Part shown: piece by piece, positions 400 to 58,000 of the stretch
Position numbering within the stretch: the first letter of the stretch is position 1
Layout of the letters: each line of letters opens with the position of its first letter
Source of the DNA: Haliotis rubra
Lineage: Eukaryota
NCBI RefSeq assembly: GCF_003918875.1
Contig: NW_025765647.1
Location: 1,550,001-1,614,000, forward strand
Direction: 5' to 3'
Length of the DNA stretch: 64,000 nucleotides
Made by a program: the position numbers and the translations under genes
Notes under the pieces: generated by a model
Seen by the model: only the letters and a program-made list of their open reading frames with translations
Told to the model about the DNA's origin: nothing
The model's database searches: none

Positions 400-615
400 G
401 AGTGAGTGAGTGAGTTTAGTTTTATGCGGCACTCAGCAATTTGCCAGCAATATGGCGGCGGTCTGTAAATAATCAAGTCTGGACCAGACAATCCAGTGAT
501 CAACAGCATGAGCATCGATCGGCACAATTGGGAACCGATGACATGTGTCAACCAAGCCAGCGAGCCTGACCACCCGATCCCATTAGTCGCCTCTTACGAC
601 AAGCATGGATTACTA
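400..615 (-). mobile_element. Short retroelement family A (no tRNA head, (ACTC)n tail), 3' part; its 5' part is at 1903-1943, split by a MULE insertion
   Basis: Matches the ~250-bp repeat seen >12 times in the window; the sequence resumes right after the MULE end at 1903. Confidence 0.85.
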
Positions 616-1902
616 GGTTATCTCCCAAAACCATATCTTAGACAGCCATAACTTAGACACTAATGAAGGGGATTAATTAAGACAACACCCATGGCTGAAA
701 TGGAACAGTCCTAATTAGTGTTCCTTGCTGAGTAGACCTAGCTTGTATTCAGAAGTAAATGATATAAACTGTACAAGCAGGATTAAGTTTAAAGATGCAT
801 GCTATGTTTTCATTTGAATATCTCCTCACAAGATGAAAGGGGTCAACTGTTCTGATACCTTAAGTGGAGTACCTCTGAAATAAACAGAACAATTGTTGTA
901 AAGTATGTGTAAATCTCATTAGTAAATCCCTGCCCCAGATTAGGTCAGTATTCAAACTCCCCTACCCCCACTCCCCATTCATGCCCCCTATTTATACTTA
1001 CTCTCATTTAAGTTTACGTTATACCTGTATCTCTTCTTAACTAACATTACTGCTATTTTTTTTTATCACTTTCCCTTCATAATATCGGCTTTTATTTATT
1101 TTCATCTCATGTTTTAAGACGTTTATTCCTTATCATAAACATATTAATTATTACACTAGCTCCCACCTACCCCAACGGCGACATTGGCTACAGCCAGAAG
1201 CCGACGTTAAACTTCCAATCATCATCATAGGTCAGTATGGCAATATGGCTTGACTTCGAAAGGTAGAGTTTGTTACTTCACAGAAGGGTACACCTAAGTT
1301 CTTCTTGACGGGTATCTTTACAACAGAAACAAAGTGAGGCAGACCCGTACAAGAACGAACACCAATTTGGAAGGATTTCATAACAGAATGAACCGCACCC
1401 TGCCGACTGACATCCTAACATCTTCCGGTTCATCGAAATTATCAGGAGATTGACAACAGATTGGAAAGACTCAAGCAGCAACTTCAACAAGCCGAGAAAA
1501 CATGTACACATCCAGTTCCTTGATGCAGTTGGACATTTGTTTCATCTTGGTTAGGGAAATTTTGTATCAGATAAATGCTGTGCTTAATGTGCCAAGGATG
1601 TCGTGGTAATGTCCAGTAAGGATTACATGTTATGTGCAAATTAAATGTTATGTTATATACAAATATTATAGTTTATGGGAATTTTGTGGAAATGCAGTGG
1701 ACATGATCAACACAGTACCATATTTAATATTTACTATTTATCTCTGTTGAACTTGTAATAAATATGCTTGTGTAATTGATTCTACTGGACTGATCCATTA
1801 TAAGAAATAGGTATCAGCTTGAGAATTAGTTGTGCACTGAACCAGAAATGTTGTTGTTTTAAGCTGTCTAAGACATGGCGGTCTAAGTTTTGGGAGGTTA
1901 CC
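616..1902 (+). mobile_element. Internally deleted Mutator-like (MULE) DNA transposon
   Basis: Imperfect TIRs (ggttatctcccaaaa...cttagacagc / gctgtctaag...ttttgggaggttacc); degenerate ~8-bp TSD (gattacta/ggttactg); remnants LLDGYLYNRNK (FLYWCH-like) and RTNTNLEGFHNRMNRTL..HPNIFRFIEII (MULE transposase C-terminal motif) at ~1300-1450. Confidence 0.75.
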
Positions 1903-2258
1903 GGTTACTGAAGGCTCATTCTAACCTGGACATTCACAGGTCTAACCTTTTGAGAGTGATTACAAAGGTGTTACAGTTAGGGTAGCCCAGTGCTTAACAC
2001 GTTAAGTGACCATGTTTTCAAAGCAAAGGAATATTCTGTTACACATTGTCAAGCACAATTTTTGTGTTCCCTGCTGTTATATTGACAGCATATTACTAGA
2101 AGCAGCATAAACATGATAAACCCACACACTGAAACTCTCGGTGGTGATGTGCATGGGTGTTTATCTACCTTAAACAATGGTTCTCAGCTAAAAAATGAAA
2201 GTGCATTAAACCAAAGGCTTGATCCTTGTGACATTTTTCTATGATCATGATAATGAGT

Positions 2259-2480
2259 CACCCATGAAGATCTGGGTTAGATTCGGTTCTCAGCAACCCC
2301 AGTGCTTGTCATAAACGACTAAAGGGGTTGAGTGTTCAGGCTCGTTTACTTGGCTGACCCACATCATCCCAACTGTGTGAATCGATGCTCATGACATTAA
2401 TCACTGGACTGTCTGGTCCAGACTCGATCATGTACAGATCAGAATATTGCTGAGTGTGGCAGTAGACAACATACAAATAA
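2259..2480 (+). mobile_element. Family A short retroelement, diverged copy
   Basis: cacccatgaagatctgggttag...gaatattgctgagtgtggc matches family A. Confidence 0.8.
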
Positions 2481-3869: not shown

Positions 3870-5236
3870 TTTTTATCACCCTCCTCGCGTTTAGCTGGAA
3901 TCGGGGGATATAGTATTAGGCTCTGTACGTACGTACGAATTGGAATATCTCAAGAACCATTGACTAGATTCTTTTCATATTTGGTACCTAGCTTCATCAC
4001 AGTGTAGAAACGTCCAAGTCAGCTTTGGTGACCTTGACCTTCATTTCAAGGTCACAAGGGGATTTTAACGTTTTGCCTGCATGTTAAGCTGTCTCAAGAA
4101 CCGTTCACTGGATTTTCTTCATATTCAATACAACCGCCTCCGTGGTGTAGTGGTTAGAGCGTCCGCCCGGAGAGCGGAAGGTCACGGGTTCGATCCACGA
4201 CCGCGGCATACCAAAAGACATTAAAAAATGGTACTTGTTGGTCCCTGCCTGGCGTTCGGCATTAATGGGTACAACGAGCACTGGTCGTCTCGGAGTCAGT
4301 ATAATGTGTCTGAGTGGTGTATTCATGCTTCACTGCGGAATGGTATCTCAGTGGGCTAGCACTATGAAACCAGCTTAAGTCTGGGCTAGTACAAGCAGCC
4401 GCACATACACATGCATGCATGTCGTCATATGAGTGAAATATTCTCAAGCACGACATAAAACCCAATTTCACCTCTCCTCACCTCATATTCAATACCAAGC
4501 TTTATTAAGGGAAGGCGCAGGGCCCAGTCGATTTTGGTGACCTTCACATAATTTTCAAGGTCATGGCGACACTTTGAGGATTTCAGCATGTTAACCTGCA
4601 TGTTAAGCTATCTCAAGAAGCGTTCACTGGATTTTCTTCATATTTCACACCACACTTCATCCAAGGAAGGCGCAGGGTCCAGTCGATTTTGGTGACCTTC
4701 ACTTTATTTTCAAGGTCACAGAGACACTTTGAAGATTTCAGCATGTTAAATTGCATGTGAAGATAATCAGCAAGATATCGCAAAAAATATTCACTGGATT
4801 TTCTTCATATTTGACACCAAGTTTCATCTAGGGAAGGCCCAGGGCTCAGTCATTTTTGGTGACCTTCACATAATTTTCAGGGTCACGACAACACTTTGAA
4901 GATTTCAGCATGTTAATCTGAATTGTCAGCAAGATATTTCAAGAACTGTTCACTGGATTTTCTTCATACACTTTCAAGAATTCCCATGAATGTTTTTCAA
5001 TAAGCAATTTCTTTAGTACTATTTTTTGCATATTTCATACACTATGACATTCATGTCAAGGTCAAAGTCAGTCTCGAAAATATGTGTGTGTTTGAACCAC
5101 TAAAGAGCAAGATATCAAGAGAGGTTGACTGGTCATGTTTTTGTTGACATTTACCTTCATCTTAAACTTCATTACTTTATAAGTTTGACTTGATAATTTG
5201 CGGCGGGGGATTATGTCACCTAAGGGACAATGTTTT
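3870..5236 (+). mobile_element. Helentron-associated non-autonomous element (HINE / CvA-pearl-like) with internal ~150-180-bp tandem repeats
   Basis: T-rich ends; 5' subterminal tatcaccctcctcgc, palindrome and (GTAC)n microsatellite; ~5 internal units with ttcactggattttcttcatat and gacctt..aaggtca; 3' subterminal gcggcgggggattat plus hairpin tgtcacctaagggaca. Confidence 0.7.
4132..4484 (+). mobile_element. Family B tRNA-derived SINE (resembles mollusc RUDI/MESC-type), full length
   Basis: A box tggtgtagtgg, B box ggttcgatcc, (CACCT)n-like tail, 11-bp TSD atattcaatac (4121-4131 / 4485-4495). Confidence 0.9.
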
Positions 5237-7726: not shown

Positions 7727-10700
7727 ATGAAAAAAATCCAAATCTTAACAGCAAAGATGTCTGCTGAAACACAGCCACCAGATGGCAGCGCTGAAGATAT
7801 GTCTGCAGACTCAGGCACCGAAGACAAATTATCTTCAAGTGTAACTCTTATCAGAGAAAACATCTCTAAACCGGCTCTCGCAACAGATAATTGTAAAACA
7901 ACTCGCGATTGCTCTTCATCAACCACCTCAGCATGTACCAGCGCAAAGGAGGACAAGAAAAAGGACATTTTCAGTAATCTACCAAAATTTGACACCCAGG
8001 ACTGGTACTCACACAAATGTTTCGACAGATATTGGAGTCACTATGGATACGTGATGAACTGGTATAAGAAGCACGGACATGTGCAGAGGTCTCTTCAGAA
8101 GAAGCTGAGCTACCATAGGTCATACCCATCATACCAAGCAGCATATTCTTATCCGTCTTTCTCATACCAGCCTTACTCTTATCCTTACTCTTATCCTTAC
8201 TCTCATCCTTACTCACATTCTCAGTACATTCATAGACAGACTCCAGTCAGGTCAAGGAAGGGGAGAGGGAGGGCAAATTGTGCTGTGTCAGGGATGCCGA
8301 GTCAGCCATCTGTTCCTCTTAAGAGGAAGCAAGGGGATATTGATATGGACGTAGAAAGTGATTTTGCTGATGCAGTGGAAGTAGGTGATGATGATGTTAC
8401 ATGTGATGTGACGCCAGCGGGAGGGGAGGATGTTGCCTCCCAGATGGAGATGGAGATTTCTGATGAAATGTTGGACTTTTTTGCAACATCTCAAAAACAC
8501 AGGCAACAGAGAGGTATGCACAATATGTCAGAATATGTTCTGAGATCAGTACCATTGTTTTCACAATGGGACATCACTTTTATGCTGCTTTGATTAATAG
8601 CCATGTGATGGTGGTGCTTGGACATATGTCATCGGTTTCCAATTGCGCAGATCGATGCTCATGCTGTTGATCACTGGATTGTCTGGTCCAGACTCGATTA
8701 TGTACAGACCACCGCCATATAGCTGGAATATTGCTGAGTGTGGCGTGAAACTAAACTCACTCACTTGGTGAGACCAAAATCTCCATTCTCAGCTATTTGT
8801 TGGTCCTCGTCAGGTCTCTTGGCATAACATTCTACTCACTCACTCACTCCTTAATAACATAGGTCCTTTGAAGTAAATATGTTCATGGGTTTCCCTTGGT
8901 TCTTGGTTTACCAAGATGTGTTCTCATCAACCCATGTTTTTGGCTTACCTTGACAAGATAGGTCCCACAGCAACCCGCATTTCCTTTATAAAATAGGTCC
9001 CCACCAACCCATGTTCTTGGGTTTCCTTGATAAGATAGGTCCCCACCAACCCATCTTCTTGGGTTTCCTTGATAAGATAGGTCCCCAGCACCCCATCTTC
9101 TTCAGTTTCCTTGATAAGATAGGTCCCCAGCACCCCATCTTTTTGGGTTTCCTTGATAAGATATGTCCCCACCAACCCATCTTCTTGGGTTTCCTTGATA
9201 AGATAGGTCCCCAGCACCCCATCTTCTTGGGTTTCCTTGATAAGATATGTCCCCACCAACCCATCTTCTTGGGTTTCCTTGATAAGATATGTCTCCACCA
9301 ACCCATCTTCTTGGGTTTCCTTGATAAGATATGTCCCCACTAACCCATCTTCTTGGGTTTTCTTGATAGATATGTCCCCAGCACCCCATCTTCTTGGGTT
9401 TCCTTGATAAGATATGTCCCCGCCAACCCATCTTCTTGGGTTTCCTTGATAAGATATGTCCCCAGCACCCCATCTTCTTGGGTTTCCTTGATAACTTAGG
9501 TCCCCAGCACCCCATCTTGGGTTTCCTTGATAAGATATGTCCCCACTAACCCATGTTCTTGGGTTTTCTTGATAAGATATGTCCCCAGCACCCCATCTTC
9601 TTGGGTTTCCTTGATAAGATAGGTCCACAGCACCCCATCTTCTTGGGTTTCCTTGATAAGATATGTCCCCACTAACCCATGTTCTTTGGTTTCCTTGATA
9701 AGATATGTCCCCACCAACCCATCTTCTTGGGTTTCCTTGATAACATAGGTCCCCAGCACCCCATCTTCTTGGGTATCCTTGATAAGATATGTCCCCAGCA
9801 CCCCATCTTCTTGGGTTTCCTTGATAACATAGGTCCACAGCACCCCATCTTCTTGGGTTTCCTTGATAAGATAGGTCCCCAGCACCCCATCTTCTTGGGT
9901 TTTCTTGTTACGATATGTCCCCACCAACCCATCTTCTTGGGTTTCTTTGATAAGATAGGTCCACAGCACCCCATCTTCTTGGGTTTCCTTGATAAGATAT
10001 GTCCCCACCAACCCATCTTCTTGGGTTTCCTTGATAAGATATGTCCCCACCAACCCATCTTCTTGGGTTTCCTTGATAAGATATGTCCCCACCAACCCAT
10101 CTTCTTGGGTTTCCTTGATAAGATAGGTCCACAGCACCCCATCTTCTTGGGTTTCCTTGATTAGATATGTCCCTAGCAACCCATATTCTTGGGTTTCCTC
10201 TGTAAGATATGTCCCAAGCAACCCATGTTCTTGGGTTTTCTTTATGAGGAAATGTAGTACTCAGAAATCTATTTCTTTGTTTGTGTTCCAGAGGCTGAGA
10301 AAAAGGAAGACATAGAAAAAGAAAAGAAAGACAAAAGGATCAACATTGAAGATGGTAAGGCAGAATCTAGAATAACATCTGGTCTCTGATATGAACATAT
10401 TTTACAGACAAAATTTCCTAAATTATTTTCATAAAATATTTTAAAAAGGAGCCCAGAGACTTTATTTTCTGAAATTGAGGTAATCTAGACTTGCCATATA
10501 TTCTAGACTTGCTTGGACTAAAATAGGTGTGTTTGCTTCTGGATTGGTATGTCAGACTAGCGGAAATGTTCAACAGTCATTTTCTCCTGTTTTCCCTGAA
10601 TATTTGCCAAGTTTACTGCAAGTGGTTGGAGAGGAAACATTTGTTGGTTCAATTCTCGGCTCCTTCATGCCGAAAGATGTTAAACAGATTGTACTTGTTA

Positions 10701-11358
10701 TCTCCCTTCCTGGTGCTGGGATTAAACAAGGACTGGTTGGCTCAGAGTATAGTGTGTCTGGTTGATATCCGTATTAAACTGTAGCATATTTGAGTGAGCT
10801 GGCACTACATGATACTGACAGTACGAGCAACTGTATACCCACACTCATACATGCCTAGGGGCGGTGGGGCAGCCTAATGGTTAAAGTGTACGCTCATCAC
10901 ACCAAAGACCCGGGTTCGATTCCCCACATGGGTACAATGTGTGAAGCCCATTTCTGGTGTCGCCCACCATGGTATTGCTGGAATATTGCTAAAAGCGGGC
11001 ATAAAACCAAACTCACTCCCTCACTAACTGCAATAGTCTTCACCACTGGACCCATTTTCACTTTACTCACCTCCATAACATGCTGTCTATTAAAATGGTC
11101 CCTGTGTTTCAAGCTTTGGTATTTACTGCTTCTGTTACAGTGAGAGGACAGCTGCGAGAACGGACATCAGAGGCTCCGAGTGAGAGGCCCGGACTGCGAC
11201 GCACGTCAGAAATGAAGCTGTTGTATGGGACAGGTGCAGCCATGATTCACGGCATGGAGACAGCACTGCAGATGACATACGACAGACACCTTGATGCCAA
11301 CCAGCCCAAATATTGGCCAAATATGCCACTGAGAGTCCACTTTTCAGATTCTTCTTAG
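7727..11358 (+). CDS. GEMIN8: Gem-associated protein 8 (SMN complex subunit), ~355 aa; coding exons 7727-8513, 10292-10354, 11141-11358
   Basis: GT/AG phase-1 junctions keep the frame (1068 nt). Motifs WYSHKCFDRYWSHY, EMEISDEMLDFFATSQKHRQQR and C-terminal RRTSEMKLLYGTGAAMIHGMETALQMTYDRHLDANQPKYWPNMPLR match the Gemin8 family; AATAAA at 11422-11427. Confidence 0.92.
8618..8765 (+). mobile_element. Family A element, 5'-truncated, in a GEMIN8 intron
   Basis: Matches the 3' half of family A including the tail. Confidence 0.8.
8880..10245. repeat. 42-bp minisatellite, ~32 copies, in a GEMIN8 intron
   Basis: Unit tttccttgataagata(t/g)gtcccca(c/g)ca(a/c)cccatcttcttggg; 14-aa periodicity in the ORF track. 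Confidence 0.97.
10858..11027 (+). mobile_element. Family C tRNA-derived SINE
   Basis: ggggcggtggggcagcctaatggttaaag...gggttcgattcccc...aaactcactc. Confidence 0.85.
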
Positions 11359-11743: not shown

Positions 11744-11993
11744 AGTGAGTGAGTGAGTGAGTTTAGTTTCACGCCACACTCGGCAATATTCCAGCTATAT
11801 GGCGGCGGTCTGTAAATACTCGAGTCCGGACCAGACAATCCAGTGATCAACAGCATGAGCATCGATCTGTGCAATTGGGATACGATGACATGTGTCAAAC
11901 AAGCCAGCGAGCCTGACCACCCGATCCGTTAAGTCACCTCTTACGACAAGCATGGGTTACTGAAGACCAATTCTAACCCGGATTTTCATGTGT
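11744..11993 (-). mobile_element. Family A element, full length
   Basis: Complete family A sequence with (GAGT)n tail on the + reading. Confidence 0.9.
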
Positions 11994-12399
11994 CTCCCGA
12001 ACCTAGAAGCTTGATCAAGACAACAGGAATTCAAACCCACAAACATAGGTTTCTCGCGTGACCAGCGCATTGTTCCTCAGATGGAGTGCCACACATTTTC
12101 TGTATACACATGTATCATATTGAGCTCATTTGGATGAATGTCAGAAATACATGTACCACAGATACATAATGAAAGGATAAGCTCAGTGTTCTTACAGACT
12201 TGCAAGGAACGAGTCACACCATGAGATACATAGAAACAAGAGAAAGCAATTGGAAACATGGTCAAATAATGAGTGCCATTGGTCAGTAGCAAAATGTTTC
12301 ATTCTGAAGATCATGTTTTTATGAGATCCAAAGTCATCGAACAAATAAATATTGAAATATCTGGGTATACAATGATTGGAGAGTTTCACAGTTGGAGTA

Positions 12400-14796: not shown

Positions 14797-15285
14797 GGGC
14801 GGTGTGGTAACCTAGTGGGTAAAGCGTTCACTCGTCACGCCGAAGATCTGAGTTCGATTCTTCACATGGGTGTTATGTAGGAATTCATATTTGGTGTCCC
14901 CCTCCATGATATAACTGACCCGTAAAGATCCGGGTTAGAATTGGTCTTCAGCAACCCATGCTTGTCGTAAGAGGCAACAAAAGGGATCGGGTGGTCAGGC
15001 TCGCTGACTTGGTTAACACATGAATTCGTATCTCAATTGCGAAGGTCGATGCTCGTGGTGTTGATCACTGGATTGTCTGGTCCAGACTCGATCTTTTACG
15101 AACCGCTGCAATATAACTGGAAAATTTCGGTTGGCTAGCCTAATGGTTAAAGCGTTCGCTCGTCACGCCACGACCCGGGTTCGATCCCCCACATGCGTAC
15201 AATGTGTGGAGCCCATTTCTGGTGTTCCCCCGCTGTGATATTGCTGGAATGTTGCTAAAAACGACGTAAAACTGAACTCCCTGAC
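14797..15285 (+). mobile_element. Cluster of family C (14797-14916), family A (14917-15122) and family C (15130-15285) elements
   Basis: Each segment aligns with other copies in the window. Confidence 0.85.
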
Positions 15286-15536
15286 ACACTGTTGTTGTTC
15301 GACCCAGGTGATCTGAACTACTTGGTTCCATGATGTACTGAAGTTCACCCTTTGGGTTTACAAAATTTATCAAGGAACATAATTACAGTTTAGGAAACAA
15401 TTTATTTAGTTTAAGAAACACGTTATTCAAGTTTAAAACTAAACAACAACAACAAATACATGCGAAAGGTCACGTTGGTTTCTATGATAGATTGATGCCC
15501 GGGTCTGGACCAAATCGTTCACAAATGTCCAAAACA

Positions 15537-16023: not shown

Positions 16024-16918
16024 TTGTCAATAAATTAAAGCGTCAGATACTGTGGCGACCTGAATGTTTCTTTTAACTGAATGGCCAGATTTAGTGTTAA
16101 AGGGTCAAAGGATGGAATCGTCCACAGTGACCCATATAAAATAATAAGAGAATCATTTCGACAATTAAAAAAACCCACCAAACGAATCTAATGTACGATT
16201 CCTACCATACAACATCTAGTATAGCATGTGTTTATTAACCACAATGCAATAGTGATGACACCGGGGGTTCGCGAAAAGGTGAGCGTATCCTGCCTCACTG
16301 GTGGCACCAGTCACAAACACACGCAAAGGCATGTCAATAGATCACTTACAAACACGAGGCCATATCGTACAAGTCAGAACAGGGAATATTTACAGCATAC
16401 GCGAGAGAATCTCCACTATTACAGCACGAACATTATAGTGACACAAAGAAGTAATTTCAGTAATGTATGTAGTTGTGTAGAAATTTCAAAATGGGTAATA
16501 TCTTCCTGGAGATGACAAGGCTTTATGGATGATCATCTTCTTTATTTTGACTTTGTAGAATGCCACTCAAACAAATAATATCCGCCTGTCATGTCTGTGG
16601 TCTAGCAGGTGCATGAGGAGACAACAGATCCCTACTATTGGGACTTTGTAGAATGTCTATCGTTATTATAGTTCAGCAACCCGTAAATCTTGGTTGATAT
16701 GTCATCGTATTCCAGCTGCGTAGATCGATGCTCATGCTTTGATCACTTCATAGTCTGGTCCATTTTCGATTATTTCCAGCCTTCCGCCATTTAGCTGGAA
16801 TATAGCTGAGTTGGCATTAAACAACAAACAAAGAGAACGACTTGCGTTGGGACATTGTGGAAATGTATATCTTCATGATAGCTGTATTCTGTATGGCCTG
16901 TGAGGGAAAATGCATTGT

Positions 16919-17888: not shown

Positions 17889-20800
17889 GTGGGGGGCAAC
17901 TCTCTACAGTCTGATTAAACTTCAACAAGATTCAAACATAAACCATTATGTTTGAAGCAAGTAACATCAACATTGAAACTTTTATGAAGTATTGAACCGG
18001 GCGAATTCGGGCGAAATTCATTCAGAGTGAAACATACGGCTTTAAACAAAGATATAGTGTGAGTAATTTAACCACGAAACCCTTTCCACATCAATGATAA
18101 ATCTCCGCCAGAAGCAGAGTCGACAGAACTATTCCAAATATATCATGATCATTTGTTTATGAATTACTATTAAATAGAGATGACACCAGGTGTTTGCGAA
18201 AAGGGGCCCCTGTCCCGTTCTATCGGCGGAACCCGTCATGACATTAACGACGGAAATACAAATATCCATGTTTTTAACATTTGATAAAAACAGAGTCTGG
18301 AAAACATGGAAGTCTTACTCCATACTCGTCCTGTCCTTTGCCCCCGTGTTGTTGAGAAGAGTGGATTCCCATTTGTCTGCAGGGAAGGAGCTGGAGGACA
18401 CCTGGGCCGTGTACCTGTCGAACACGCACTCGCTGACACACTCACACTCCTTCACGAAGGTGCCATTCTTGGACAACGATCCTCGTAAAAGAAACAGTAG
18501 GCCGAGGTTCAAAGGTTTGATGATACACTCAAATGATATCGTGCAACAAAGCCAATTATGAGGCCATGCATAGTAAAATGTTTCACGTCAGGCTAAAAAA
18601 GTATTAGTCAAAAACGTATGTCTTGCTATCCTGTAATGTCTTTTCCTTACTTACTTGGTAGTCTAGTAGGTGTCATACATTGAAAATTGAACCTAATTGT
18701 TGCAAATCCCAGTACCAAACTACACGGCCAGGAGTTCCTGTCGCCGGAGTTGTACATGTATTTGTGTGTGTGAACCTTTGCTTTTCGCCTCTGTACAGTT
18801 GAAACAGAAGAGGTCTATGCTCTCCTATTAAGGGTTGTTGGGTTGGTGGGTGTTTTTTTGTTTAACCCCGCACTCAGCACTATTGCAGATATATAGCGGC
18901 AGTCTGTAGATAATCGAGTCTGGACCAGACAATCCAGTGATCAACATCACGAGCATCGTTCAACTAAATCAGAGAGCCTGACCACCCGATCCCGTTAGTC
19001 GCCTCTTACGACAAGGATGGGTTACTGAAGACCAGTTCTAACCGAGGTCTTCACAGGTATCCTATTAAGGGTAATTAGCCGATATACTCACTAACAGCAG
19101 GATTGTAACAAGTATCCAGCTGCACTAGAGAGCACCGAAGATCATCCACTGTAATGAAAATCAATAAGGTGATCAAAATGAAATCAATGGTGATTTTGCA
19201 CAGGAGAGTGTGTTTCGACATGTGAGATTACAGTTTTGTCGTTGAGAGGGTGACATGAATAATACAAGCGTGAGTTGGTAGGTATGTACAGTACACTGTA
19301 GGACTGTCTCATATAACACCCCAATTGTGGAAACACGAATATGAACATTCACACGAAACACAAGTATCAACATGTGTTATCACCCTGGTCAAGTCACTTA
19401 CTTCATGTGTGCCTCAGTCTACCCTTAGTTAACGTAATCGCCTCCTGGAGAGCGGAAGGTCGCGGGTTCGATCCCCGACCGCGTCATACCAAAAGACGTT
19501 AAAATATGGTACTTGTTGGTCCCTGCCTGGTGCTTGGCATTAATGGGTACAACAAGGACTGGTCGGCTCGGAGTCAAGTCTAGCACTATAAAAAGCCAGC
19601 TTCAGTCTGGGATAGTACAAGCAGCCGCACATACACATACACACGCATGCACGTCGTCATATGAGCGAAATATTCTCAAGCACGACGTAAAACCCAATTT
19701 CACCTCACCTCACCTCAGTTAACGTCTCTATACAGGATTACTAGCAGTTCTTCAAAACTACTCTGGCACCGTTCCTGTAGGACTGCAGTATACCATTGAA
19801 TATGAACTGTGCTTCATTCGCACACTTGGTGTAAATGTATACAACATCTGTCAAATACTTACATGGGACGTAAGGTCCGACACATCCACACTGCTTAAAT
19901 GCCTTCAGCTGAACACACTCCATCAAGCAGTGGTCGTAAGTGTAGAGAGAGTAGATTTTCAGAGGATTAAAAAAATCTGGACTGTCTGTGTCCAGACAAT
20001 TAGTGTCATCAAATGCTTTGTACGGGAGGGTCTGGTAAAGAAACTTGAAACAAAAATCAATGATTTGTTTAAAATGCCTTGAAATTGTGGGGCCAGATGC
20101 AAGTATGCATGAGAGTAGGATTACAGACATCGCATTGGATATGACCACCTAATACACAGCGATACAACATAATAACGCGATGATAATTAAATATTAGGTC
20201 ACCGATTTTGATAATTGATGGCATAGACTTATAGACATTAAAAAGACATAAGTTTTAAGATTTAATGCATCAGAAAATATGCCCTTTTCTCGTTCATAAA
20301 ATCTGCTCATATGATTGTAGGATCAGTGAAGACAATCGACTAACGGGATCGGGTGATCAGGTTTGCTGACTTGGTTGACACATGTCATCCCGGTGGCGTT
20401 GATAGATGTCAACGCAGTTGATCACTGGATTATCTGGTAGCCTCGAATATTTACAGATCGCAGCCATATAGCTGGAATATTGCTGAGTGCGGCGTAAAAC
20501 ACCAACAAACATACCCACCTGAATTTTTTGTATGGCAACATATGTTGAGAACCCGGGTGCAGCCATCACCACAATAGAGCTAGCGTCTGGGTGGACGTCC
20601 GGATGATGGAGAAATACCTGCGAACATACACAGCACAATTCTTTCTCTCCATTTTACATTGTGCGAACTATTTATAAAAATCTTGGGCACACATCTTCAC
20701 ACCAACTACTCCAAGGTTTATGGAAGGGGAGATTTACTTTGAGCCATATCCCTACACGAATAACGTCCTGAAGGTTATTCCTCACAAAATCAGAATCCGT

Positions 20801-26110: not shown

Positions 26111-27149
26111 TATAAATACTCCTGTTCTTCAACCTTCAACCTACACGTCACACGACATGACCGTTGAGAATCACAATATTACCAGGGCATATCATGGTAA
26201 TGGTTCTGCAGTTCCACGTGCTTGGTTAACAGTGATTACAATGAAAAGTCATTCCTGCACAGCTAGAGACTTGAATCAGCTTTCAGCTTTCATACCACTG
26301 TTTGTTTTCAATGTCTGTATGTGTAGCTTTGTCATTGCTAAGAGGATTTTATCGATCTAGTAAGGTTCCTATTTCTCAAAGTGTTTTCAGGAGACTTCGT
26401 AAGCCAGTGTTAATCTATTTGAAATCAGAGTATCACTGCAATAGTAAGCTGACGTACAAAAGAAAGATCACACCTGATGTTTTGGAATTATTTTCCAAAT
26501 CCCAAGTAGATATTTTGAAACATTTTCTGATTGCGACTTGAAAATCACAAGTTTTGTATACGTGTTGCCAGACATGTTTTGAGTTTGGCAAATGGAACGT
26601 CTTTGTTAGGTCATTTGGGTACGAACAAAACTTGTGACAAAATGTTGTCCCATTACTAATTTTCGGCATGTGTGTTGGCAAAGATAATTAAAGATAATCA
26701 GATAAATACCTTCACCTTGGTTGGGCAATAAGTACATGTATGCTCACATGGTGTCCAGAGGCTGTTCCTTTACGGAAGATTACGGCTCAAGTCATGCTGT
26801 TGATCACTGAATTGTCTGGTCCAGACTCGATTGTTTACAGACCGCCGCCATATAGCTGGAATATCGCTGACTGCGGCGTAAAACTAAACTCACTCACTCC
26901 AAAGCTTGTGAAGTTGCAATGGAAAATTTGAAAGAATCCGAGGACAAGATTGTAACATATGTATACATGGCCAACAGAGGCTCACTAAATATAGCATTAT
27001 TAATATTACTAGTTATAGGTTTGCAGTATATACTAAGGGGGGATCACTCTCATCGGACTTCCTGTAGAAGGCTATGTGCTCACAGCACCAGCCACTGTTC
27101 ACATGACAGTTCCTATTATAGCTTTCTAACACGAAGCTCAACCTTGTAA

Positions 27150-28180: not shown

Positions 28181-28669
28181 TATAAAAGGCATTCCCTATT
28201 GACCTTTCTTAGAGATACATGGTCGTTCATTCGCTGGACCCAGCATACAATTTCTTTCACTCTCTCTGCGGTTTGTTTTAGCTTTGGAATTGGATTTGAA
28301 AACGGAATTGGCATGTCCTAGGATTTTAGGTCAAACCAAAAGTCGTATTTACTGAAGCATGGTTTTGGCAAATATATTCTTTAGTTATTGGCTTTACATT
28401 TGGCATTATTTGATGTATCACTAATATTAAATTCAGTGATGAAATGATCAATTTAGGGATGCTTATATGTAACGATTATGTTTTTTGAGACCTTGTCAAG
28501 GAACAATTACAAAGATATTCATGAAAGTCTGACCAAGCTGATTGGAACAGAACTGTTCTGTTTCATTATTGCGTCGGGTTTTAGGAATTTCATATTATAC
28601 CAGCAATAGGGGTAGCTTAGTGGTTAAAACTTTCCCTCCTCGCACCGAAGATCCGGGTTTGACTCTTTA

Positions 28670-32679: not shown

Positions 32680-32837
32680 GCAGGGGTGGCCTAGTGGTGA
32701 AAGTGTTCGCTTGTCACGCCACGACCCGGGTTCGATTCCCCACATGGGTACAATGTGTGGAGCCCATTGCTGGTGTTCCTCGCCGTGATGTTGCTGGAAT
32801 ATTGCTAAAAGCGGCTAAAAACTAAACTCACTTACGC
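32680..32837 (+). mobile_element. Family C SINE at the duplication junction
   Basis: Paralogous to 15130-15285, sharing the same small deletion (cacgccacgacccggg). Confidence 0.85.
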
Positions 32838-35490: not shown

Positions 35491-38195
35491 TGCCAGTTAT
35501 CCTCTCATGTCTAGGGGACGTATCTCTGTACACCAAATTCAGACGCTCCAAGCCAAATTGTGACCCGTCCAAGGTTTTTATGATATAGGGGAGCTTTAGC
35601 AATTGGATACTTACAAAACAGAGAAGCCACGGTGTATTGAGGTTGTTGTGTGATGGATGTCACCATCATCCGGTCGTAAAACACTTTCAGCTCCAGATAG
35701 TTGTCTCTGAATAACACACATCGGCAAATAGTTATTATATATTCGTGGCATATACATCTATAGCACATTTACTGTGATTAACTCCGCTGAGATTTTGAAA
35801 ACCCACGAACATAGCGGTAAAAGACAAAGGATTGGGATTGGGATTCAAACCATTCACCAGCGACGTTGGCAGTAAGGGGCAGACAACTCTCCACAGTCTG
35901 ATCAAATGCCCTTTATGTGACCGATATGGCGTCAGCATAACAGCGGTAACATTTCGTTCTTTTTGTTGCTTTAATGGCCAAGATTTTATTCGGGTGTTCC
36001 GAGAGCAAAACCTTTAAGATGGAAGTGCCCGATTTTGTCGACAGAACTCAAACATAAACCATTATGTTTGAAGCAAGTAACATTAACATTGAAGCTTTTA
36101 TAAAGTACTGAACTGGGCAATTCTGAGGTATTCGGGCGACATTCATTGAGATTGAAACCTACGGTTTTAAACGGAGATATAGTGTGAGTATTTGAACCAC
36201 GAAACCCTTTCCACATTAATGATAAAGCAGAGTCGACAGAACTATTCCAAATATATCATAAACATTTGCAACACCAGGTGTTTGCGAAAAGGGGCACCTG
36301 TCCTGTTCCATCGCGTAACCCGTCATAACACTACTGACGGAAAGAAATTTCCATGATTTGTTTTTAACATTTGTTAAATCAGAGCGTTGAGAACATGGAA
36401 CTCTTACTCCATACTCTTCCTGTCCCTTGCCCTCGTGTTTTTGAGAAGAGTGGATTCCCATTTGTCTGCAGGGAAGGAGCTGGAGGACACCTGGGCCGTG
36501 TACCTGTCGAACACGCACTCGCTGGCACAGCGACACTCCTCCACGAAGGTGCCATTCTTGGACAACGATCCTCGTGAAAGAAAACTCGCATTAAGCAATG
36601 TTTACACGATTTGGATATTCCCAAATACACTAAACCAACTTCACTGGTTTCAGCAACAGGTATGTCTGATGTTGAACCACTTGGTTACCCAAGCGGGAAC
36701 CTCAGCCTTGACTCTGATATTTCCAAATAAATCGAAGGTTAGCTCTGGATTGTGGTTTTTCCAACAGGTACGAGGGTTGGTTGACAAGGTCTGAGCCTCA
36801 ACAAGATGTGTCTGTGTAATAAACACACCTGAAGCTATTGATTAGTTGATCGATGTATTCATTTCATTCCAGTTATTCACTGCATGTTTTATAAACCGGA
36901 AGTGTGTCTTTGCCAAACACGAAGACCATCCGATCCCGTTAGTCGCTTCATACGACAAGCATGGGCTACTGAAGACTAATTCTAACCCAGGTCTTCACGG
37001 GTATCCTATTGAGGGTAAATAGCTGATATACTCACTAACAGCAGGATTGTAACAAGTATCCAGGTCAACTAGAGAGCACCGAAGATCATCCACTGTAATG
37101 AAAATCAATAAAACACTGTTGGTGATTAGTCACAGGTGAGTATATTTTGACATGTGAGATAACAGTTTTGTCGTGAGAGCCTGCCATGAGTAATACAAGC
37201 GTCAGTTGGCAGGTATGTACAGTACATCGTAGGTCTGTGTCGTATTACGCCTCTTCTTCAAAAGAAGTTCTAGTATCGTTCCTGGAGGACTGCAGTATTC
37301 CACTCAATATGAACTGATGTAAATGTCTCACAAATCAGTCAAATACTTACATGGGACATAAGGTCCGACACATCCACACTGTCGAAATGCCTTCACCTGA
37401 ACACACTCCATGAAGCAATGGTCGTAGGTGTAGCGGGAGTAGATCTTCAGGGGATTCACGAAATTGTGACTGTTTGTGTCCAGGCAAATAGTGTCATCAA
37501 ATGCCTTGTACGGGAGGGGCTGGTAACTATACTAGAAACGAAAGTCAATAATCTATTTGAAATGTCTTGAAATTGTGGGGCCAAATGCATGCATGTCGAG
37601 AGTCCATGGTTGTATGATGACGGACATTGCATTGGATATGACCACCAAATACACAACGACCTAACATAATATTTATCGCGATGATACTTAAATAGTTTAA
37701 AGCGCTGATTTTGATAACTGATTTGTCAGATTTATTGACACCATAAAGAGATAATATTCATAAATATTATGGTTAAATGCTTGAAAAAAACCATGTCCTT
37801 CTCTCGTACATAAAATATGCTTATTTGATTGTAGGACTACTGAATTTGTTTTATTGTACGATATCATATACATCATTCATAAAACTTTGTAGGCAGGTGC
37901 TCGGACTCATTTTGGGAGCAAAAACATCCCAAAACGAACTGATATATATCGCAAACAAGAAATTACTATGTAGACATGGATATGAACACGTGTGTAAAAT
38001 ATAACTCTGTTAACTAATTATAAGAAAATTGTTGAAAATTATCAATGTTGGAGACTTCTCTGGAGCTCTCAATTTTCCACAAGGCATAACTAGGATGCTT
38101 CCTTGGTGCTAAGTCCATAACATTGTGAGCGTGTCCCCAAGTAATCAGAATATAAACTCAAACATACCTCCTATATTCAAGCATATTTACTTGTC

Positions 38196-38410
38196 ACCCG
38201 TGAAGATCTTCAACTACCCATGCTTGTCGTAAGCGGTCACTAACGGGATCGGGTGGTCAGGCTCGCTGACTTGGTTGACACATGTCATCCATTTACGTAG
38301 ATTCATGCTAACGCTGTTGATCACTGGGTTGTCTGGCAGTCTCGGTTATTTACAGACCGCAGCCATATAGCTTGAATATTGCTGAGTGCGGCGTTAAACA
38401 ACAACAAACA
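38196..38410 (+). mobile_element. Family A element in intron 3 of B (orthologous copy at 20336-20511 in A)
   Basis: Family A match at the same intron position in both paralogues. Confidence 0.8.
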
Positions 38411-43305: not shown

Positions 43306-43472
43306 CGGTGGGGTAGCCTAGTGGTTAAAGCGTTCGCTCGTCACGCCGAAGACCCGGGTTCGATTCCCCACATGGGCACAATGTGTGAAGCTCATTTCTA
43401 GTGTCCCCCGCCGTGATATTGCTGGAATATTGCTAAAAGCGGCGTAAAACCAAACTCACTCACTCACTCACT
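43306..43472 (+). mobile_element. Family C tRNA-derived SINE, young copy
   Basis: Clean A/B boxes, tRNA-Asp-like GTC loop, (ACTC)n tail. Confidence 0.9.
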
Positions 43473-49511: not shown

Positions 49512-49571
49512 GGCACCCCTTGAAGAGCACCCTCCTCGCGGTGGGTGCTGGGTGATGCTAATAGGTCTTCA
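49512..49571 (+). ncRNA. Candidate HDV-like self-cleaving ribozyme with minimal or absent P4
   Basis: P1 GGCACCC/GGGTGCT (G-U at +1), P2 TGAAGAgC/GgTCTTCA, P3 ACC/GGT, L3 CTCCTCGC, P1.1 CC/GG, J4/2 G-C-TAA. Confidence 0.7.
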
Positions 49572-49722
49572 CCCCAGTAGTGTGGACCCGGGGCATATAG
49601 ATCCACAGCACCCTATTGGTGGTCGTGAGACGAATTGGGCAACCTGTTTGCCGTTGGTTGCGCCCGTGGGTTTTCTGTCGGTGGAGAAAGGGAGTCGGTT
49701 GGTGGTTGAGGGTATTAGGAAC
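49512..49722 (+). mobile_element. 5' end of a non-LTR retrotransposon or derivative, 3' part deleted
   Basis: GC-rich block absent from the paralogous region, starting exactly at the ribozyme G+1; similarity to the family A head continues downstream (cagcaccc..gtcgtgagacgaattggg). Confidence 0.55.
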
Positions 49723-49791
49723 CTGTTTGAAAGTGATTCATACACACATGCTTATGATATTGTCAGAGTTGTACACACGACTTTGACTGTA

Positions 49792-50586: not shown

Positions 50587-50810
50587 GAGTGAGTGAGTTT
50601 AGTTTTTACATCGCACTCAGCAACATTCCAGCTATATGGTGGTTGTCTGTAAATTATCAAGTCTGGACCAGACAACCCAGAGATCAACAGCATGATCATC
50701 GATCTGCGCATTTGGGATACGATGACATGTGTCAACCAAGTCTGACCACCCGATCCCATTTGTCGCCTCTTACGACAAGCATGGGCTGCTGAAGATCAAT
50801 TCCAACCCGT
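50587..50810 (-). mobile_element. Family A element
   Basis: Family A match. Confidence 0.85.
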
Positions 50811-55062: not shown

Positions 55063-58000
55063 CTACCAGTTGCTGATTCTGTTACGAGCTTTTCTTCCTC
55101 TACATTTGTCCAAGAGGAAGAGGGTGATGAACACCAGGAATTCCGCGATCTCTGCGACTGTCAGCATGCTGGCTCCAAGACACAGACACATCTGACCCCC
55201 GATATTCGCTGCAACAACAACACCATTGCCTGAACATCTACATCGACATAAGGAACTCCAAAATATCAAGACGACTCCCCGTACCCTGTAGAGTGATACG
55301 AAAAAGTATGCTTTAAATATACTTCTCTTCTTAAAATTATTTCTGACTCTGGATACGTTTCGACTATTCCCGTGAAGATCGGATTTAACTTGGTCTCCAG
55401 CAAACCATGCTTGTCATAATGGGCGACTAACAGGATCGTGTGGTCAGGGTGGGTGACTTTTGACACATGTCATCGTATCCCAGTTGCGTAGATGCCAATG
55501 ATGTTGACCACTGGATTGTCTGGTCCAGACTAGATTATTTACAGACTGCTGTCATATAGCTGGAATATTGCTGAGTGTGGCGTTGAACAAAACAATAAAC
55601 CAACACACAAATAAACAAAAGTTTCGACTCGGTGTGTGTAAGTTTGTTTTGACACTATTTCGTTTTCATTTGAGGTGAGGTGAGGTGAGATTGGGTTTAA
55701 CGTCGTGCTTGAGAACATTTCGCTCATATGACGACGTGCATGCGTGTGTATGTGTATGTACGGCTGCTTGTACTAGCCCGGCGGAAACTGGTTTTATAGT
55801 GCTAGCCCACTGAGATACCATGCCGCAGTGAAGCATGAATATCCCACTCAGACACATTATACTGACTCCAAGCCGACCAGTCCTTGTTGTACCCATTAAT
55901 GCCGAGCGCCAGACAGGGACCAACAAGTACCATATTTTAACGTCATTTGGTATGACGCGGTCGGGGAAGTTTTCAGTTGAACATTAAGGACACGAATATG
56001 ATTTTCATAATCGAAAACTCAAGATGCCAATGCAGTACTAGGTTCTCGCTGTCAAACAATACTATTCGGCTAAGATATATGGCACTTACAAAAAAGCGAG
56101 GCTGCTGTGTATTGAGGTTGCTGTGTGATGGTTGTCACCATCATCTGGTCGTAGAACACTCTCAGTACCACGAAGTTCTCTCTGAATCAAAGACATCATG
56201 AAGTATTTGTCCATCTACTACCCAGTGTGATGGGAGTAATACTGCCGCCATTTTGAAAATTTACATGTGCGTCTTTTGTGCTTTCGGTCCATCTCATCAA
56301 CCTTTTTCTTTTCTGAACCTTTCATGAAGGACTTTCCATTGTGCTACATATTCCCATTAGAACATAAAGAATTACATTTTACAAAACAACAACATTACGC
56401 TGCTTTAGATGTACGGCTGATACTGAGTATTCAATGCCCTGGGCGCTGTTTCAAACGAATAGAAGACTGAAACATTGGTTTGAAACACAAATGTATCACA
56501 TTTCCTTCGCATCCATAGATTGAAATAAACAATAGTTGTTTATGACATTTTTGTTACGGAAACAGAGACTAGATCACGTTTCTCAAAGCAATCTTGGAGC
56601 TACAATGAATGTACGTCCATGTGAAAGTATGGATGTTATGGTCACCCAAGCGCTAAGATCGCTCTCTGGAACGAGGCCTTGGTCCACGCGGAAGTCTTAC
56701 GTCATGGCCTCTTTGTCCTGTGCCCCTCTGGTCTTCAGGAGGTGGTTGATCCAGACCTTTGCTGGGAATGAGCTAGAGGACACCTGGGCAGTGTAACTGT
56801 CAAACTTGCACTCGCTGACACACCCACATCCCTCCAGGAAGTTAGCTTTGCTGGACTCTGCATCTTGTGAAAAGACACGACAAAACCCGTTCCACATCAA
56901 TGAGACGTCTTTGCTAAAAGCAGGGTCGATTGTACAATTCTGACCATACCGTGAGTATCTGTTTCTTTGACGCCACATTCAGCAGTATTATGGCTGTATC
57001 CAGCATCCAGCAAATGATTACACAGTGTAACACGTTTTGGATATTTCCACATATAATATACCACGATAGAAGAGGTCTCACCTCATTGTAAAAGACTACC
57101 GTTATCGGTAAATTCCTAGTCCCGTATACTCACCAAGAATGGGCTTGTAACAACTATCCTCTCTGGTCAATGAACACAAAGGACCACCCCCTGCAATATA
57201 AATCTGTAAATGTGATTGTTACGCAACCATTCCTTCACGGAGCACTACCATTTCCGTCACGAGATAGAAAGAAAGGAATTAATTATATTTTTTTACTACA
57301 GAATTCCATTGAATAAAAAAATACTGAAATACACGTGCGATGAAATCGTTTTGAAAATGAGTTAATAACTTACGTGGATCAGAAGGTCCGACACATCCAC
57401 ACTGGTCGAAGGCCTTGGTCTGGACACACTCCATGACGCAATGGTGAAAGGTGTAAGGGGAGTAGTACTTGAGAGGATTCACAAACTTGGGACTAGTTGT
57501 GTCCACACAGTCCACGTGATCAAACGCCATGTAGGGAAGCGGTTGGTAGACATACTACAAACAAAGCTTCACGTTATTTGTGTTTAGTACGAAATCACCT
57601 TATTGAAATGTAGGACTTAATTGCACAATGCTATGGTTAGCTTACACAGATAATATACTAGTGCTCAAAAGAAAGTATACAGTGTGTTGACCAAACTTTG
57701 ACCAAACGCATAATAATGAACATCTGCTAATTTCAATAGAGCATTCAATTTTACAGCAAATATACACAATTTCATTTCATACAAAGTCGAGGTACCGTTT
57801 GACTGACACTGAAAGACGCGTGGTATCATAGTGTGAACTTTACACAAATGAACAAAACACGTCAATGCATTGATGACATAAGACGACGGATGACGTTAGA
57901 CGTGATCCGTTGCCATTCCTCTTGGAGACCTTGTTCCAGTTGTTGAGCGGTGACAGGTGGCGCTGGTAGTCTTCTGATTTGTCGATCCAGGTAGTCCCAT

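What the first reader, a model, noticed from the sequence alone, without database searches (positions are those of the whole stretch)
14917..14950. The dominant short repeat has no tRNA head and starts with the ribozyme's P1/P2 pseudoknot minus the catalytic core
Seen: family A (>12 copies) lacks A/B boxes and begins GACCCG-TGAAGA(T/C)C-CGGGTT-AGAATT-GGTCTTCA. This can form GACCCG/CGGGTT (G-U first pair) crossed with TGAAGATC/GGTCTTCA. It parallels 49512-49571 (GGCACCC..TGAAGAGC..GGGTGCT..TAATA-GGTCTTCA) with P3/L3 missing. Similarity continues downstream (gcaaccc..gtcgtaagaggcgactaacggg vs gcaccc..gtcgtgagacgaattggg). Copies at 2259 (CCCA/TGGG) and 1943 (CCTG/CAGG) keep the pairing, though CpG decay could mimic this. 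Inference: family A is a bipartite non-autonomous derivative (LINE 5' end plus LINE 3' tail) whose head is a shrunken ribozyme scaffold, possibly kept as an internal promoter, 5'-protecting fold or RT-recognition element.
Basis: partly seen in the sequence, partly recalled or inferred. Interest (0 to 1): 0.75.

Follow-up and report, generated by a model that had tools for sequence, protein, structure and literature searches.

The report
LINE-leader head of an abalone SINE
The 34 bases are the start of a very abundant, tRNA-less short jumping element of a type already described in abalone; this start is copied from the stretch lying just behind the self-cutting RNA of a partner LINE, not from a cut-down copy of that self-cutting RNA.

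Summary
Family A is a real 244-bp retroposon with 15 copies in the window and 7,590 exact heads in the genome. Target-site duplications flank it directly, so it has no tRNA head.

Pairwise and profile alignments place head nt 3-65 collinearly on LINE nt 63-126. That segment lies immediately after the LINE's 60-nt HDV-like ribozyme (window 49574-49640). The fit is 78% identity with one gap (z=19; profile E=1e-7). Against the ribozyme alone the profile E is 0.16.

The head hairpin TGAAGATC/GATCTTCA is the homologue of the LINE hairpin TGTGGACC/GGTCCACA, and they differ by compensatory changes. The extra likeness to ribozyme P1/P2 rests on about three bases, plus a private mutation in the window's decayed LINE copy.

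The element fits the "LP-SINEs" described in Haliotis in 2016. An extra G precedes 42% of copies, which suggests capped transcripts rather than self-cleavage.

This scan has flagged the same module several times on other DNA of this genome, with conflicting readings. My tests favour the "module behind the ribozyme" reading. The function is untested.

The parts
14917..14950 (+). Head of this family A copy. It consists of an optional G, a 5' flank ACCCG, a hairpin 5' strand, a 12-nt loop beginning CGGGT, and a hairpin 3' strand.
   Evidence: and 53/54: exact match to the quoted string, and pair counts.
14917..15126 (+). Family A copy covering consensus nt 1-210. The 3' tail is missing; the copy is 89% identical to the consensus.
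   Evidence: blastn; alignment.
14797..14916 (+). 5' part of an unrelated tRNA-derived SINE (A/B-box head plus the start of its tail) in which the family A copy is nested.
   Evidence: five other copies in the window; the junction lies in the tail motif, and comparable nested insertions with duplications occur in L067 and L071.
15128..15290 (+). Second tRNA-derived SINE copy, abutting the truncated 3' end of the family A copy.
49512..49571 (+). Decayed HDV-like, P4-less ribozyme forming the first 60 nt of an I/Nimb-like LINE copy.
   Evidence: RF00094 24.9 bits, E=0.4; the intact copy L061 scores 30 bits, E=0.008, and RF02682 scores 28.3 bits, E=0.0012; target-site duplication at G1 of L061.
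49574..49640 (+). LINE leader module directly behind the ribozyme. This is the true homologue of the family A head (hairpin TGTGGACC/GATCCACA in this copy).
11751..11994 (-). Full-length family A copy (consensus nt 1-244, 93% identical) with the (CTCA)n tail.
2260..2438 (+). Family A copy with head. It carries the CCCA/TGGG variant, produced by decay of both CpGs.
18856..19058 (-). Family A copy with head (hairpin TGAAGACC/GGTCTTCA) and its own target-site duplication.
36924..37002 (-). Family A head fragment (nt 2-80). It shares about 110 bp of upstream flank with the copy at 19058, so the locus was duplicated.
55369..55593 (+). Family A copy with a decayed head.
1903..1942 (-). The same 40-nt head joined to a different body (a second head-sharing family). 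It carries the CCTG/CAGG variant.
404..614 (-). 5'-truncated family A copy (consensus nt 34-244). Further truncated copies lie at 8621-8765, 16689-16811, 20337-20500, 26792-26899, 34165-34298, 38205-38399, 44766-44816 and 50587-50813.

Best explanation
Family A is an LP-type SINE: a 244-bp non-autonomous retroposon without a Pol III head, copied in trans by an I/Nimb-like LINE.

Origin of the parts:
- Its first 65 nt or so are homologous to the leader module at nt 61-126 of that LINE's RNA. This module lies directly behind the LINE's 60-nt HDV-like ribozyme. The SINE carries no part of the ribozyme core and most probably no part of the ribozyme at all.
- Its last 55 nt or so are the LINE-type 3' stem-loop plus a (CTCA)n repeat. 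These are used to prime reverse transcription at the target.

The first 36 nt are an 8-bp hairpin whose 12-nt loop begins CGGG(G/T) and can pair with the 5' flank (A/C)CCCG.

Shown here: the homology, the precise 5' ends, the compensatory changes in the hairpin, and the absence of ribozyme features.

Inferred:
- The SINE RNA starts at the A of ACCCG by capped transcription, not by self-cleavage.
- The hairpin works at the RNA level as a leader element that the LINE's proteins or the cell recognise (packaging, RNP formation or stability). It may also act as part of a promoter, as the 2016 authors proposed.
For: Homology of the head:
- blastn aligns head nt 3-65 to LINE nt 63-126 at 78% identity with 1 gap. 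E is 3e-9 against five LINE loci and 3e-11 against one UTR.
- Smith-Waterman z is 19 (L061 type), 11.6 (L064 type) and 4.9 (window copy), always at the same LINE coordinates.
- A LINE 5' profile hits 34 of 51 SINE heads, always at profile positions 64-118, with best E=1e-7.
- An older SINE subfamily (L020, L067, L068) and a LINE variant share the loop CGGGGTAGAATA 12/12.
- The SINE shares the GTCGTAAGAGGCGAC indel state only with the L061-type LINE.

Hairpin covariation:
- Between LINE and SINE, AU/UA is 16/10 and AU/GC is 16/10.
- Within the SINE, A12:U29 changes to G:C through G.U (Fisher p=0.0007).

No ribozyme in the head:
- No HDV hit at E of 10 or less.
- Zero nt lie between the two strands where P3/L3 should be.
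- No SINE-type head lies behind a ribozyme core, and there are no hybrids.

LINE identity:
- zf-CCHC ORF1, APE, RT and RNase H.
- The tail is 75% identical to the SINE tail, and its stem has two compensatory pairs: CGTCAC/GTGACG versus CGCCGC/GCGGCG.

5' ends:
- Target-site duplications abut ACCCG.
- G precedes the head in 3,206 of 7,590 copies, 42% against 20% G in the window.
- G precedes 4 of 29 ribozyme-processed LINE copies.

Modularity: the 36-40-nt head alone is joined to other bodies in L066 and at window 1903-1942.

Literature: PMC4758252 describes duplication-flanked LP-SINEs in Haliotis with a LINE 5'-UTR-derived head of about 70 bp and an ACTAAA hexamer before the terminal repeats.
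Against: - Head nt 2-15 match ribozyme nt 4-17 of the L064-type LINE at 13/14 (z=5.5).
- The SINE hairpin is closer to ribozyme P2 (14/16) than to the LINE's own leader hairpin (10-12/16).
- Five of the seven differences between SINE head and LINE module sit in the stem while the loop is identical. That is odd for gradual drift and leaves room for a recombination with the ribozyme's 5' strand.
- Covariation comes from essentially two lineages, so only a few independent events support it.
- Predicted folding energies are not better than shuffles (z from -0.5 to -1.2).
- The extra G could also reflect a templated first base with ragged ends.
- Sequence identity to the published Haliotis LP-SINE could not be checked.
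- No RNA data could be obtained.
Confidence: 0.72

Rival explanations
1. The head is the LINE ribozyme's P1 and P2 helices with P3/L3 and the rest of the core deleted. The following LINE hairpin is also deleted, so the head is a dead-ribozyme scaffold.
For: - The order of the blocks is parallel: 5' CCCG, then TGAAGA.C, then GGGT, then AAT-rich, then G.TCTTCA.
- With cheap long gaps, the head against 'ribozyme plus downstream with the LINE hairpin removed' scores z=3.0-5.5.
- There is a 13/14 match to the L064-type ribozyme 5' strand.
Against: - It needs three deletions (13, 9 and about 37 nt) to reach about 31/39 matches. The collinear alignment reaches 32/39 with none.
- The ribozyme-only profile gives E=0.16.
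- z is 1.1-1.9 for the LINE subfamily that is otherwise closest to the SINE, and for the window copy.
- The loop and the 30 nt downstream match the LINE module, not the ribozyme.
- Part of the perceived identity (GGTCTTCA at 49563-49570) is a private mutation of one decayed copy.
Confidence: 0.06
2. Chimeric head. A deletion or a reverse-transcriptase template jump between two similar 15-mers in the LINE leader joined ribozyme nt 4-17 to LINE nt 76 onward. The two 15-mers are the ribozyme 5' strand and the 5' strand of the leader hairpin. Under this model only the first 14 nt of the SINE come from the ribozyme, and the hairpin was then repaired by compensatory changes.
For: - The 13/14 match to the L064-type ribozyme.
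- The differences from the LINE module are concentrated in the stem, and the new stem bases (AA/TT) equal those of P2.
- The two LINE 15-mers share 11/15.
Against: - The best ribozyme match (L064 type) and the best module match (L061 type) come from different LINE subfamilies.
- Given that the bases changed, matching P2 at two positions plus A2 has a chance probability of about 0.04-0.1 (my estimate).
- The SINE lacks the LINE's first three bases.
- No hybrid copies exist today.
Confidence: 0.14
3. The head is only a DNA-level internal promoter borrowed from the LINE (the 'LINE promoter' idea of 2016). The RNA pairings have no role.
For: - A SINE needs a portable promoter.
- 5' ends are precise and there is a G excess at -1.
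- This is the proposal in PMC4758252.
Against: - Compensatory changes keep the hairpin complementary in LINE and SINE and within SINE subfamilies. A DNA motif does not require that.
- In the LINE the module sits 60 nt inside the RNA. LINE-type modules practically always have the ribozyme in front: 58% carry the upstream 10-mer against 43% for a downstream control 10-mer. So in the LINE the module does not set the start of the propagated RNA.
Confidence: 0.12
4. The head derives from the T-arm/B-box region of the co-resident tRNA-derived SINE (GAAGACCCGGGTTCGAAT resembles GAAGATCCGGGTTAGAAT).
For: About 16 of 18 bases are identical. Weak nhmmer hits of the head profile on tRNA-SINE copies.
Against: - Those hits have E=0.14-3, against 1e-7 to 1e-11 for the LINE module.
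- Other LINE subfamilies have unrelated loop sequences.
- There is no A box, and there are three mismatches to the B-box consensus.
Confidence: 0.02

Closest known systems
LP-SINEs of gastropods and bivalves (Hdi_LP/Hmi_LP of Haliotis, Lsa_2 of Littorina; Matetovici et al. 2016, PMC4758252)
   Same: - No tRNA or 5S head.
- The first 70 bp or so are homologous to the 5' UTR of Nimb/I-type LINEs.
- Variable target-site duplications.
- 3' short tandem repeats preceded by ACTAAA.
- Found in abalone.
   Different: - Sequence identity could not be checked, because figures and Repbase are not available here.
- The paper places the homologous LINE segment at the first 68-70 bp of Nimb-17_LMi, I-3_DR and RTE-9_CPB. 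In this genome's LINE the segment starts at nt 61, behind an HDV-like ribozyme.
- The sections I read (section 10 and term-search excerpts) report neither that tandem arrangement nor the hairpin covariation.
NARTc/RIME and SIDER elements of trypanosomatids (PMC4035085, PMC3383444)
   Same: They are non-autonomous elements that share the conserved 5' hallmark of their partner LINE (L1Tc/ingi). Some SIDER signatures no longer fold as ribozymes.
   Different: In those elements the shared hallmark (Pr77) is itself the HDV-like ribozyme and promoter. Here the shared piece is the module next to the ribozyme, and the ribozyme is absent from the SINE.
R2 SIDEs (short internally deleted R2 elements, PMC3414825)
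   Same: They have a LINE 5' end plus a LINE 3' end and are mobilised in trans.
   Different: - R2 SIDEs keep an active 5' ribozyme and are plain internal deletions.
- Family A lacks the ribozyme.
- Its 120-nt middle part has no match in the LINE loci examined.
HDV-like self-cleaving ribozymes at LINE 5' ends (R2, RTE, L1Tc; Rfam RF00094, RF02682)
   Same: There is a superficial order of two crossed helices, and in 42% of copies a G at position 1 opposite a U.
   Different: There is no P3, L3 or P1.1, no catalytic C in the main subfamily loop, and no covariance-model hit.

Membership tests
HDV-like ribozyme (applied to the family A head) | P1 helix starting at the cleavage site, crossed with P2 | tested here: met
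   ACCCG/CGGGT and TGAAGATC/GATCTTCA are complementary and crossed. With zero linker nucleotides, full formation of both helices is sterically doubtful (my inference).
HDV-like ribozyme (applied to the family A head) | P3 helix, L3 loop and the P1.1 mini-helix forming the active site | tested here: not met
   No nucleotide lies between the P2-like 5' strand and the P1-like 3' strand.
HDV-like ribozyme (applied to the family A head) | Catalytic cytosine in J4/2, and a match to the covariance models | tested here: not met
   The loop remainder TAGAATT has no C in the main subfamily. There is no RF00094 or RF02682 hit at E of 10 or less, whereas the LINE ribozyme scores 30 and 28 bits.
HDV-like ribozyme (applied to the family A head) | Self-cleavage activity | not testable with these tools
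   This needs an in vitro transcription and cleavage assay.
LP-SINE (Matetovici 2016) | No small-RNA-derived head; head homologous to a LINE 5' UTR | tested here: met
LP-SINE (Matetovici 2016) | Variable-length target-site duplications directly flanking the element, and 3' tandem repeats | tested here: met
   duplications of 9-15 nt in 24 copies; (CTCA)n preceded by ACTAAA.
LP-SINE (Matetovici 2016) | Sequence homology to the published Hdi_LP/Hmi_LP consensus and to the first 68-70 bp of Nimb-17_LMi, I-3_DR and RTE-9_CPB | not testable with these tools
   Figures and supplements are not held, and there is no Repbase or Dfam access.
SIDE (internally deleted LINE) | 5' end identical to the LINE's own 5' end, and a body made only of LINE sequence | tested here: not met
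   The SINE starts at the equivalent of LINE nt 61. SINE nt 66-187 have no match in the five LINE loci.
tRNA-derived SINE | A and B boxes or a tRNA-like fold at the 5' end | tested here: not met
   The adjacent tRNA head at 14797-14916 is a separate element.

The most novel reading that the evidence does not exclude
The 36-66-nt head is a functional RNA module and not merely a promoter. It is a hairpin whose G-rich loop pairs with the 5' end, or is bound by the LINE's zinc-knuckle ORF1 protein. It serves as the leader or packaging signal of a widespread group of I/Nimb-type LINEs, and SINEs have copied it to be taken up by the LINE machinery.

Its block-by-block likeness to the outer helices of the neighbouring ribozyme would then reflect an old tandem duplication of the ribozyme that lost its core. 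The LINE copy would later have diverged to avoid misfolding with the active ribozyme.
Probability: 0.15. Interest if true: 0.6.

Novelty: already known. Interest (0 to 1): 0.33.

Why it matters
SINEs without a Pol III head are rare, and how they get a defined 5' end and attract the LINE machinery is unsettled.

Placing the head next to the ribozyme, rather than inside it, changes which experiments make sense. Cap and transcription-start mapping and protein-binding or packaging tests are indicated. Cleavage assays are not.

It also settles a disagreement among earlier notes of this scan. The element class itself is already published, so the gain is a refinement and not a discovery.

Tried and rejected
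- tRNA-headed full-length copies: rejected. Duplications abut the head. The tRNA head at 14797 belongs to a host SINE.
- Origin from a tRNA T-arm: rejected. E=0.14-3.
- LINE module as a detectable duplicate of its own ribozyme: z is about 0.
- Ribozyme core followed by a SINE-type head, a SINE-type hairpin with LINE downstream sequence, and a LINE-type hairpin with SINE body: 0 genome matches each.
- Rfam on the SINE: only a wrong-strand hit at E=4.4.
- Thermodynamic stability: not better than shuffles.
Later genome work used counts only.
- The 2011 JBC paper on HDV-like ribozymes in retrotransposons is not held.
- The species name 'abalone' comes from earlier scan notes and from the fit to the Haliotis LP-SINE description. 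I did not test it independently.

Full report
**What is at the coordinates**

Window 14917-14950 reads exactly as quoted.

- A consensus built from 36 genome copies is 244 nt long. It ends in a stem-loop tail followed by ACTAAA and (CTCA)n.
- The window holds 15 copies or fragments with family A body. Six keep the first three bases.
- The genome is 1.38 Gb. A similarity search gave at least 5,647 candidates, and there are 7,590 exact matches to the 24-nt head.

**No tRNA head**

- In 24 copies a target-site duplication of 9-15 nt could be found. It abuts ACCCG directly or with one or two extra bases.
- Upstream flanks are unrelated between copies, apart from duplicated loci.
- ARAGORN finds no tRNA in the window. 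Rfam finds only an unrelated tRNA-like hit at 4136-4208.

The cited copy needs care, because a tRNA-like head (A/B boxes) lies immediately upstream at 14797-14916. That stretch belongs to a separate tRNA-derived SINE with five other copies in the window.

The junction falls in that SINE's tail motif. Genome copies L067 and L071 show family A nested at the same kind of site with clear duplications. So this is a nested insertion, possibly followed by a small deletion between the two similar tails.

**The LINE and its ribozyme**

Window 49512-49571 gives a full-length but sub-threshold match to the HDV ribozyme models (RF00094 24.9 bits, E=0.4). A search with 49512-49770 found 1,554 candidates.

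Intact copies such as L061 are 5.8 kb and have target-site duplications at G1. They encode a zinc-knuckle ORF1, an AP endonuclease, a reverse transcriptase and RNase H. This is an I/Nimb-like architecture. In L061 the ribozyme scores 30 bits (E=0.008) on RF00094 and 28.3 bits (E=0.0012) on RF02682, and it ends at LINE nt 59-60.

**Where the head really aligns**

- blastn of the family A consensus against five LINE loci gives one strong hit. Head nt 3-65 align to LINE nt 63-126 at 78% identity with one gap (E=3e-9; E=3e-11 against one UTR).
- Smith-Waterman scores against dinucleotide shuffles give z=19 (L061 type), 11.6 (L064 type) and 4.9 (decayed window copy). They always fall on the segment just after the ribozyme, which in the window is 49574-49640.
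- A profile of 33 LINE 5' ends hits 34 of 51 SINE heads, always at profile positions 64-118, with best E=1e-7. A profile of the ribozyme alone gives at best E=0.16.

Similarity to 49574-49640 is significant. Similarity to 49512-49571 is not.

Those skipped 38 nt are the homologue of the head.

**Anatomy under the collinear alignment**

| Feature | SINE | LINE |
|---|---|---|
| 5' flank | ACCCG | CCCCG |
| Hairpin | TGAAGATC/GATCTTCA (older copies GGTCTTCA) | TGTGGACC/GGTCCACA |
| Loop | CGGGTTAGAATT (main); CGGGGTAGAATA (older subfamily) | CGGGGTCGAATA; one variant CGGGGTAGAATA |

- The older SINE subfamily loop is identical, 12/12, to the loop of that LINE variant.
- The following 30 nt, including the GTCGTAAGAGGCGAC hairpin, are shared with the L061-type LINE only.
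- On 27 sequences the hairpin is 93% paired. Two pairs are fully switched between LINE and SINE (AU/UA 16/10, AU/GC 16/10).
- A third pair changes within the SINE from A:U through G.U to G:C. C29 occurs in 5 of 10 copies with G12 but in 1 of 39 with A12 (Fisher p=0.0007).
- The 5'-flank/loop pairing is 86% paired and its CCCG/CGGG core is conserved. Only one of its pairs covaries (AU 14, CG 9), and the older SINE subfamily has a mismatch at that pair.
- The 'kept' variants at 2259 and 1943 are changes at the two CpGs that pair with each other. When those sites change, they are unpaired more often than paired.
- Folding energies are not exceptional.

**How much ribozyme likeness remains**

- The LINE's leader module shows no similarity to its own ribozyme (z about 0).
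- The SINE head matches ribozyme nt 4-17 of the L064-type LINE at 13/14 (z=5.5). It does not match the ribozyme of the L061 type, which is the SINE's closest relative in the rest of the module (z=1.1-1.9).
- Relative to the LINE module, the extra likeness to P1/P2 comes from three 5' bases (A2, A9, A10) plus their forced partners. Given that they changed, I estimate the chance of this at 0.04-0.1.
- GGTCTTCA at 49563-49570, identical to the SINE's 3' strand, is a private mutation of the window copy. The LINE family has GCTCTTC there.

I therefore rank the readings as follows:

1. Collinear: the head is the leader module.
2. Chimeric: the first 14 nt come from the ribozyme's 5' strand through a deletion between two similar 15-mers. 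This remains possible.
3. This is unlikely.

Exact-pattern searches found no hybrids of any kind.

**How the 5' end is made**

- G precedes the head in 3,206 of 7,590 exact copies. That is 42%, against 20% G in the window.
- Where duplications can be read, this G lies between the duplication and ACCCG.
- Ribozyme-processed LINE copies show G at -1 in 4 of 29.
- An untemplated G is what reverse transcription of a cap produces in other Pol II-transcribed retroelements (established knowledge). Capped initiation at A is thus the simplest reading. Ragged ends of a templated G are not excluded.
- LINE-type modules are practically always preceded by the ribozyme. Of 476 exact modules, 277 have the upstream ribozyme 10-mer, and 205 have a downstream control 10-mer. 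So within the LINE the module does not define the start of the propagated RNA. Together with the compensatory changes, this argues that the module is more than a DNA promoter.
- The first 36-40 nt alone occur on at least two other bodies (L066; window 1903-1942). That marks the hairpin as the portable unit.

**The 3' end**

The SINE tail is 75% identical to the LINE tail over 55 nt (E=2e-4). The stem differs by two compensatory pairs, CGCCGC/GCGGCG versus CGTCAC/GTGACG. The co-resident tRNA-derived SINE carries a still closer version of the same tail. This is the usual arrangement for SINEs that borrow a stringent-type LINE's 3' recognition element (established knowledge). SINE nt 66-187 have no match in the LINE loci examined.

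**Comparison with the literature**

Matetovici et al. 2016 (PMC4758252) described 'LP-SINEs' in Littorina, Haliotis, oysters and scallops. Their features:

- Duplication-flanked elements whose first 70 bp or so are homologous to the first 68-70 bp of Nimb-17_LMi, I-3_DR and RTE-9_CPB.
- In Haliotis and Ostrea, an AATATA or ACTAAA hexamer before the terminal repeats.
- A proposed promoter role, with an explicit comparison to the trypanosomatid Pr77 promoter/ribozyme.

Family A fits every feature I could test. Sequence identity could not be checked.

The related cases differ in one respect. In NARTc/SIDER (PMC4035085) and in R2 SIDEs (PMC3414825), the shared 5' piece is the ribozyme itself. Only one paper in the library uses the LP-SINE term. 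The sections of it that I read (section 10 and term-search excerpts) report neither the tandem ribozyme-plus-module arrangement nor the hairpin covariation.

**Earlier scan notes**

This scan has flagged the same module on other DNA of this genome at least eight times, with conflicting verdicts.

- Two notes call it a dead or cut-down ribozyme (s1-339689, s1-349420).
- Two place it in the 70 nt or so after the ribozyme (s1-323644, s1-344836).
- Two infer capped RNA (s1-329509, s1-329451).

My own alignments and counts support the second and third groups and contradict the first.

**Limits**

- No cross-species sequences of the module were available.
- The function of the head remains an inference.

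Noticed in passing
window 8980-10242: A 42-bp satellite with 30 copies, 90% matching. Some of its units contain GGTCCACAGCACCCCAT, the 3' strand of the LINE leader hairpin plus the following bases. Profile hits are only marginal (E=0.04-0.5).
   Followed up: partly
window 14797-14916, 15128-15290, 10859-11022, 28611-28673, 32690-32835, 43306-43465: An abundant tRNA-derived SINE whose 3' tail is a close relative of the family A tail, so both SINE families probably use the same LINE partner. Its T-arm region (GAAGACCCGGGTTCGAAT) looks superficially like the family A head.
   Followed up: partly
L067:1511-1800, L071:1512-1800, window 14908-15126: Family A copies are repeatedly nested in the ATAT.GCTG^ part of other SINE or LINE tails, with that motif as the target-site duplication. 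The examples were found with a pattern that required this motif, so a true target preference is not shown.
   Followed up: no
L066:1210-1512 (minus strand); window 1867-1942 (minus strand): Two other short elements carry the same 36-40-nt head on unrelated bodies. The L066 element also has the same type of tail, with an (AACC)n repeat and its own target-site duplication.
   Followed up: partly
window 18856-19200 and 36924-37150: Two family A copies share about 110 bp of upstream flank, including the target-site duplication. This is a local duplication of an already occupied site, and the second copy is cut at nt 80.
   Followed up: no
window 49785-49840: A (GGTGA)n microsatellite interrupts the decayed LINE copy about 270 nt after its start. 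No LINE ORFs follow in the window.
   Followed up: no
window 4136-4208: The only Rfam tRNA hit in the window at gathering threshold (30.3 bits, several non-canonical pairs). The same sequence is inserted in LINE copy L037, so it is the head of yet another tRNA-derived SINE rather than a tRNA gene.
   Followed up: partly
L006, L010, L021, L022, L023, L028 (around position 1500 of each): Six genome loci carry the same family A copy (head variant TGAATTTC) with identical flanks and duplication. The occupied site is part of a larger repeated unit.
   Followed up: no
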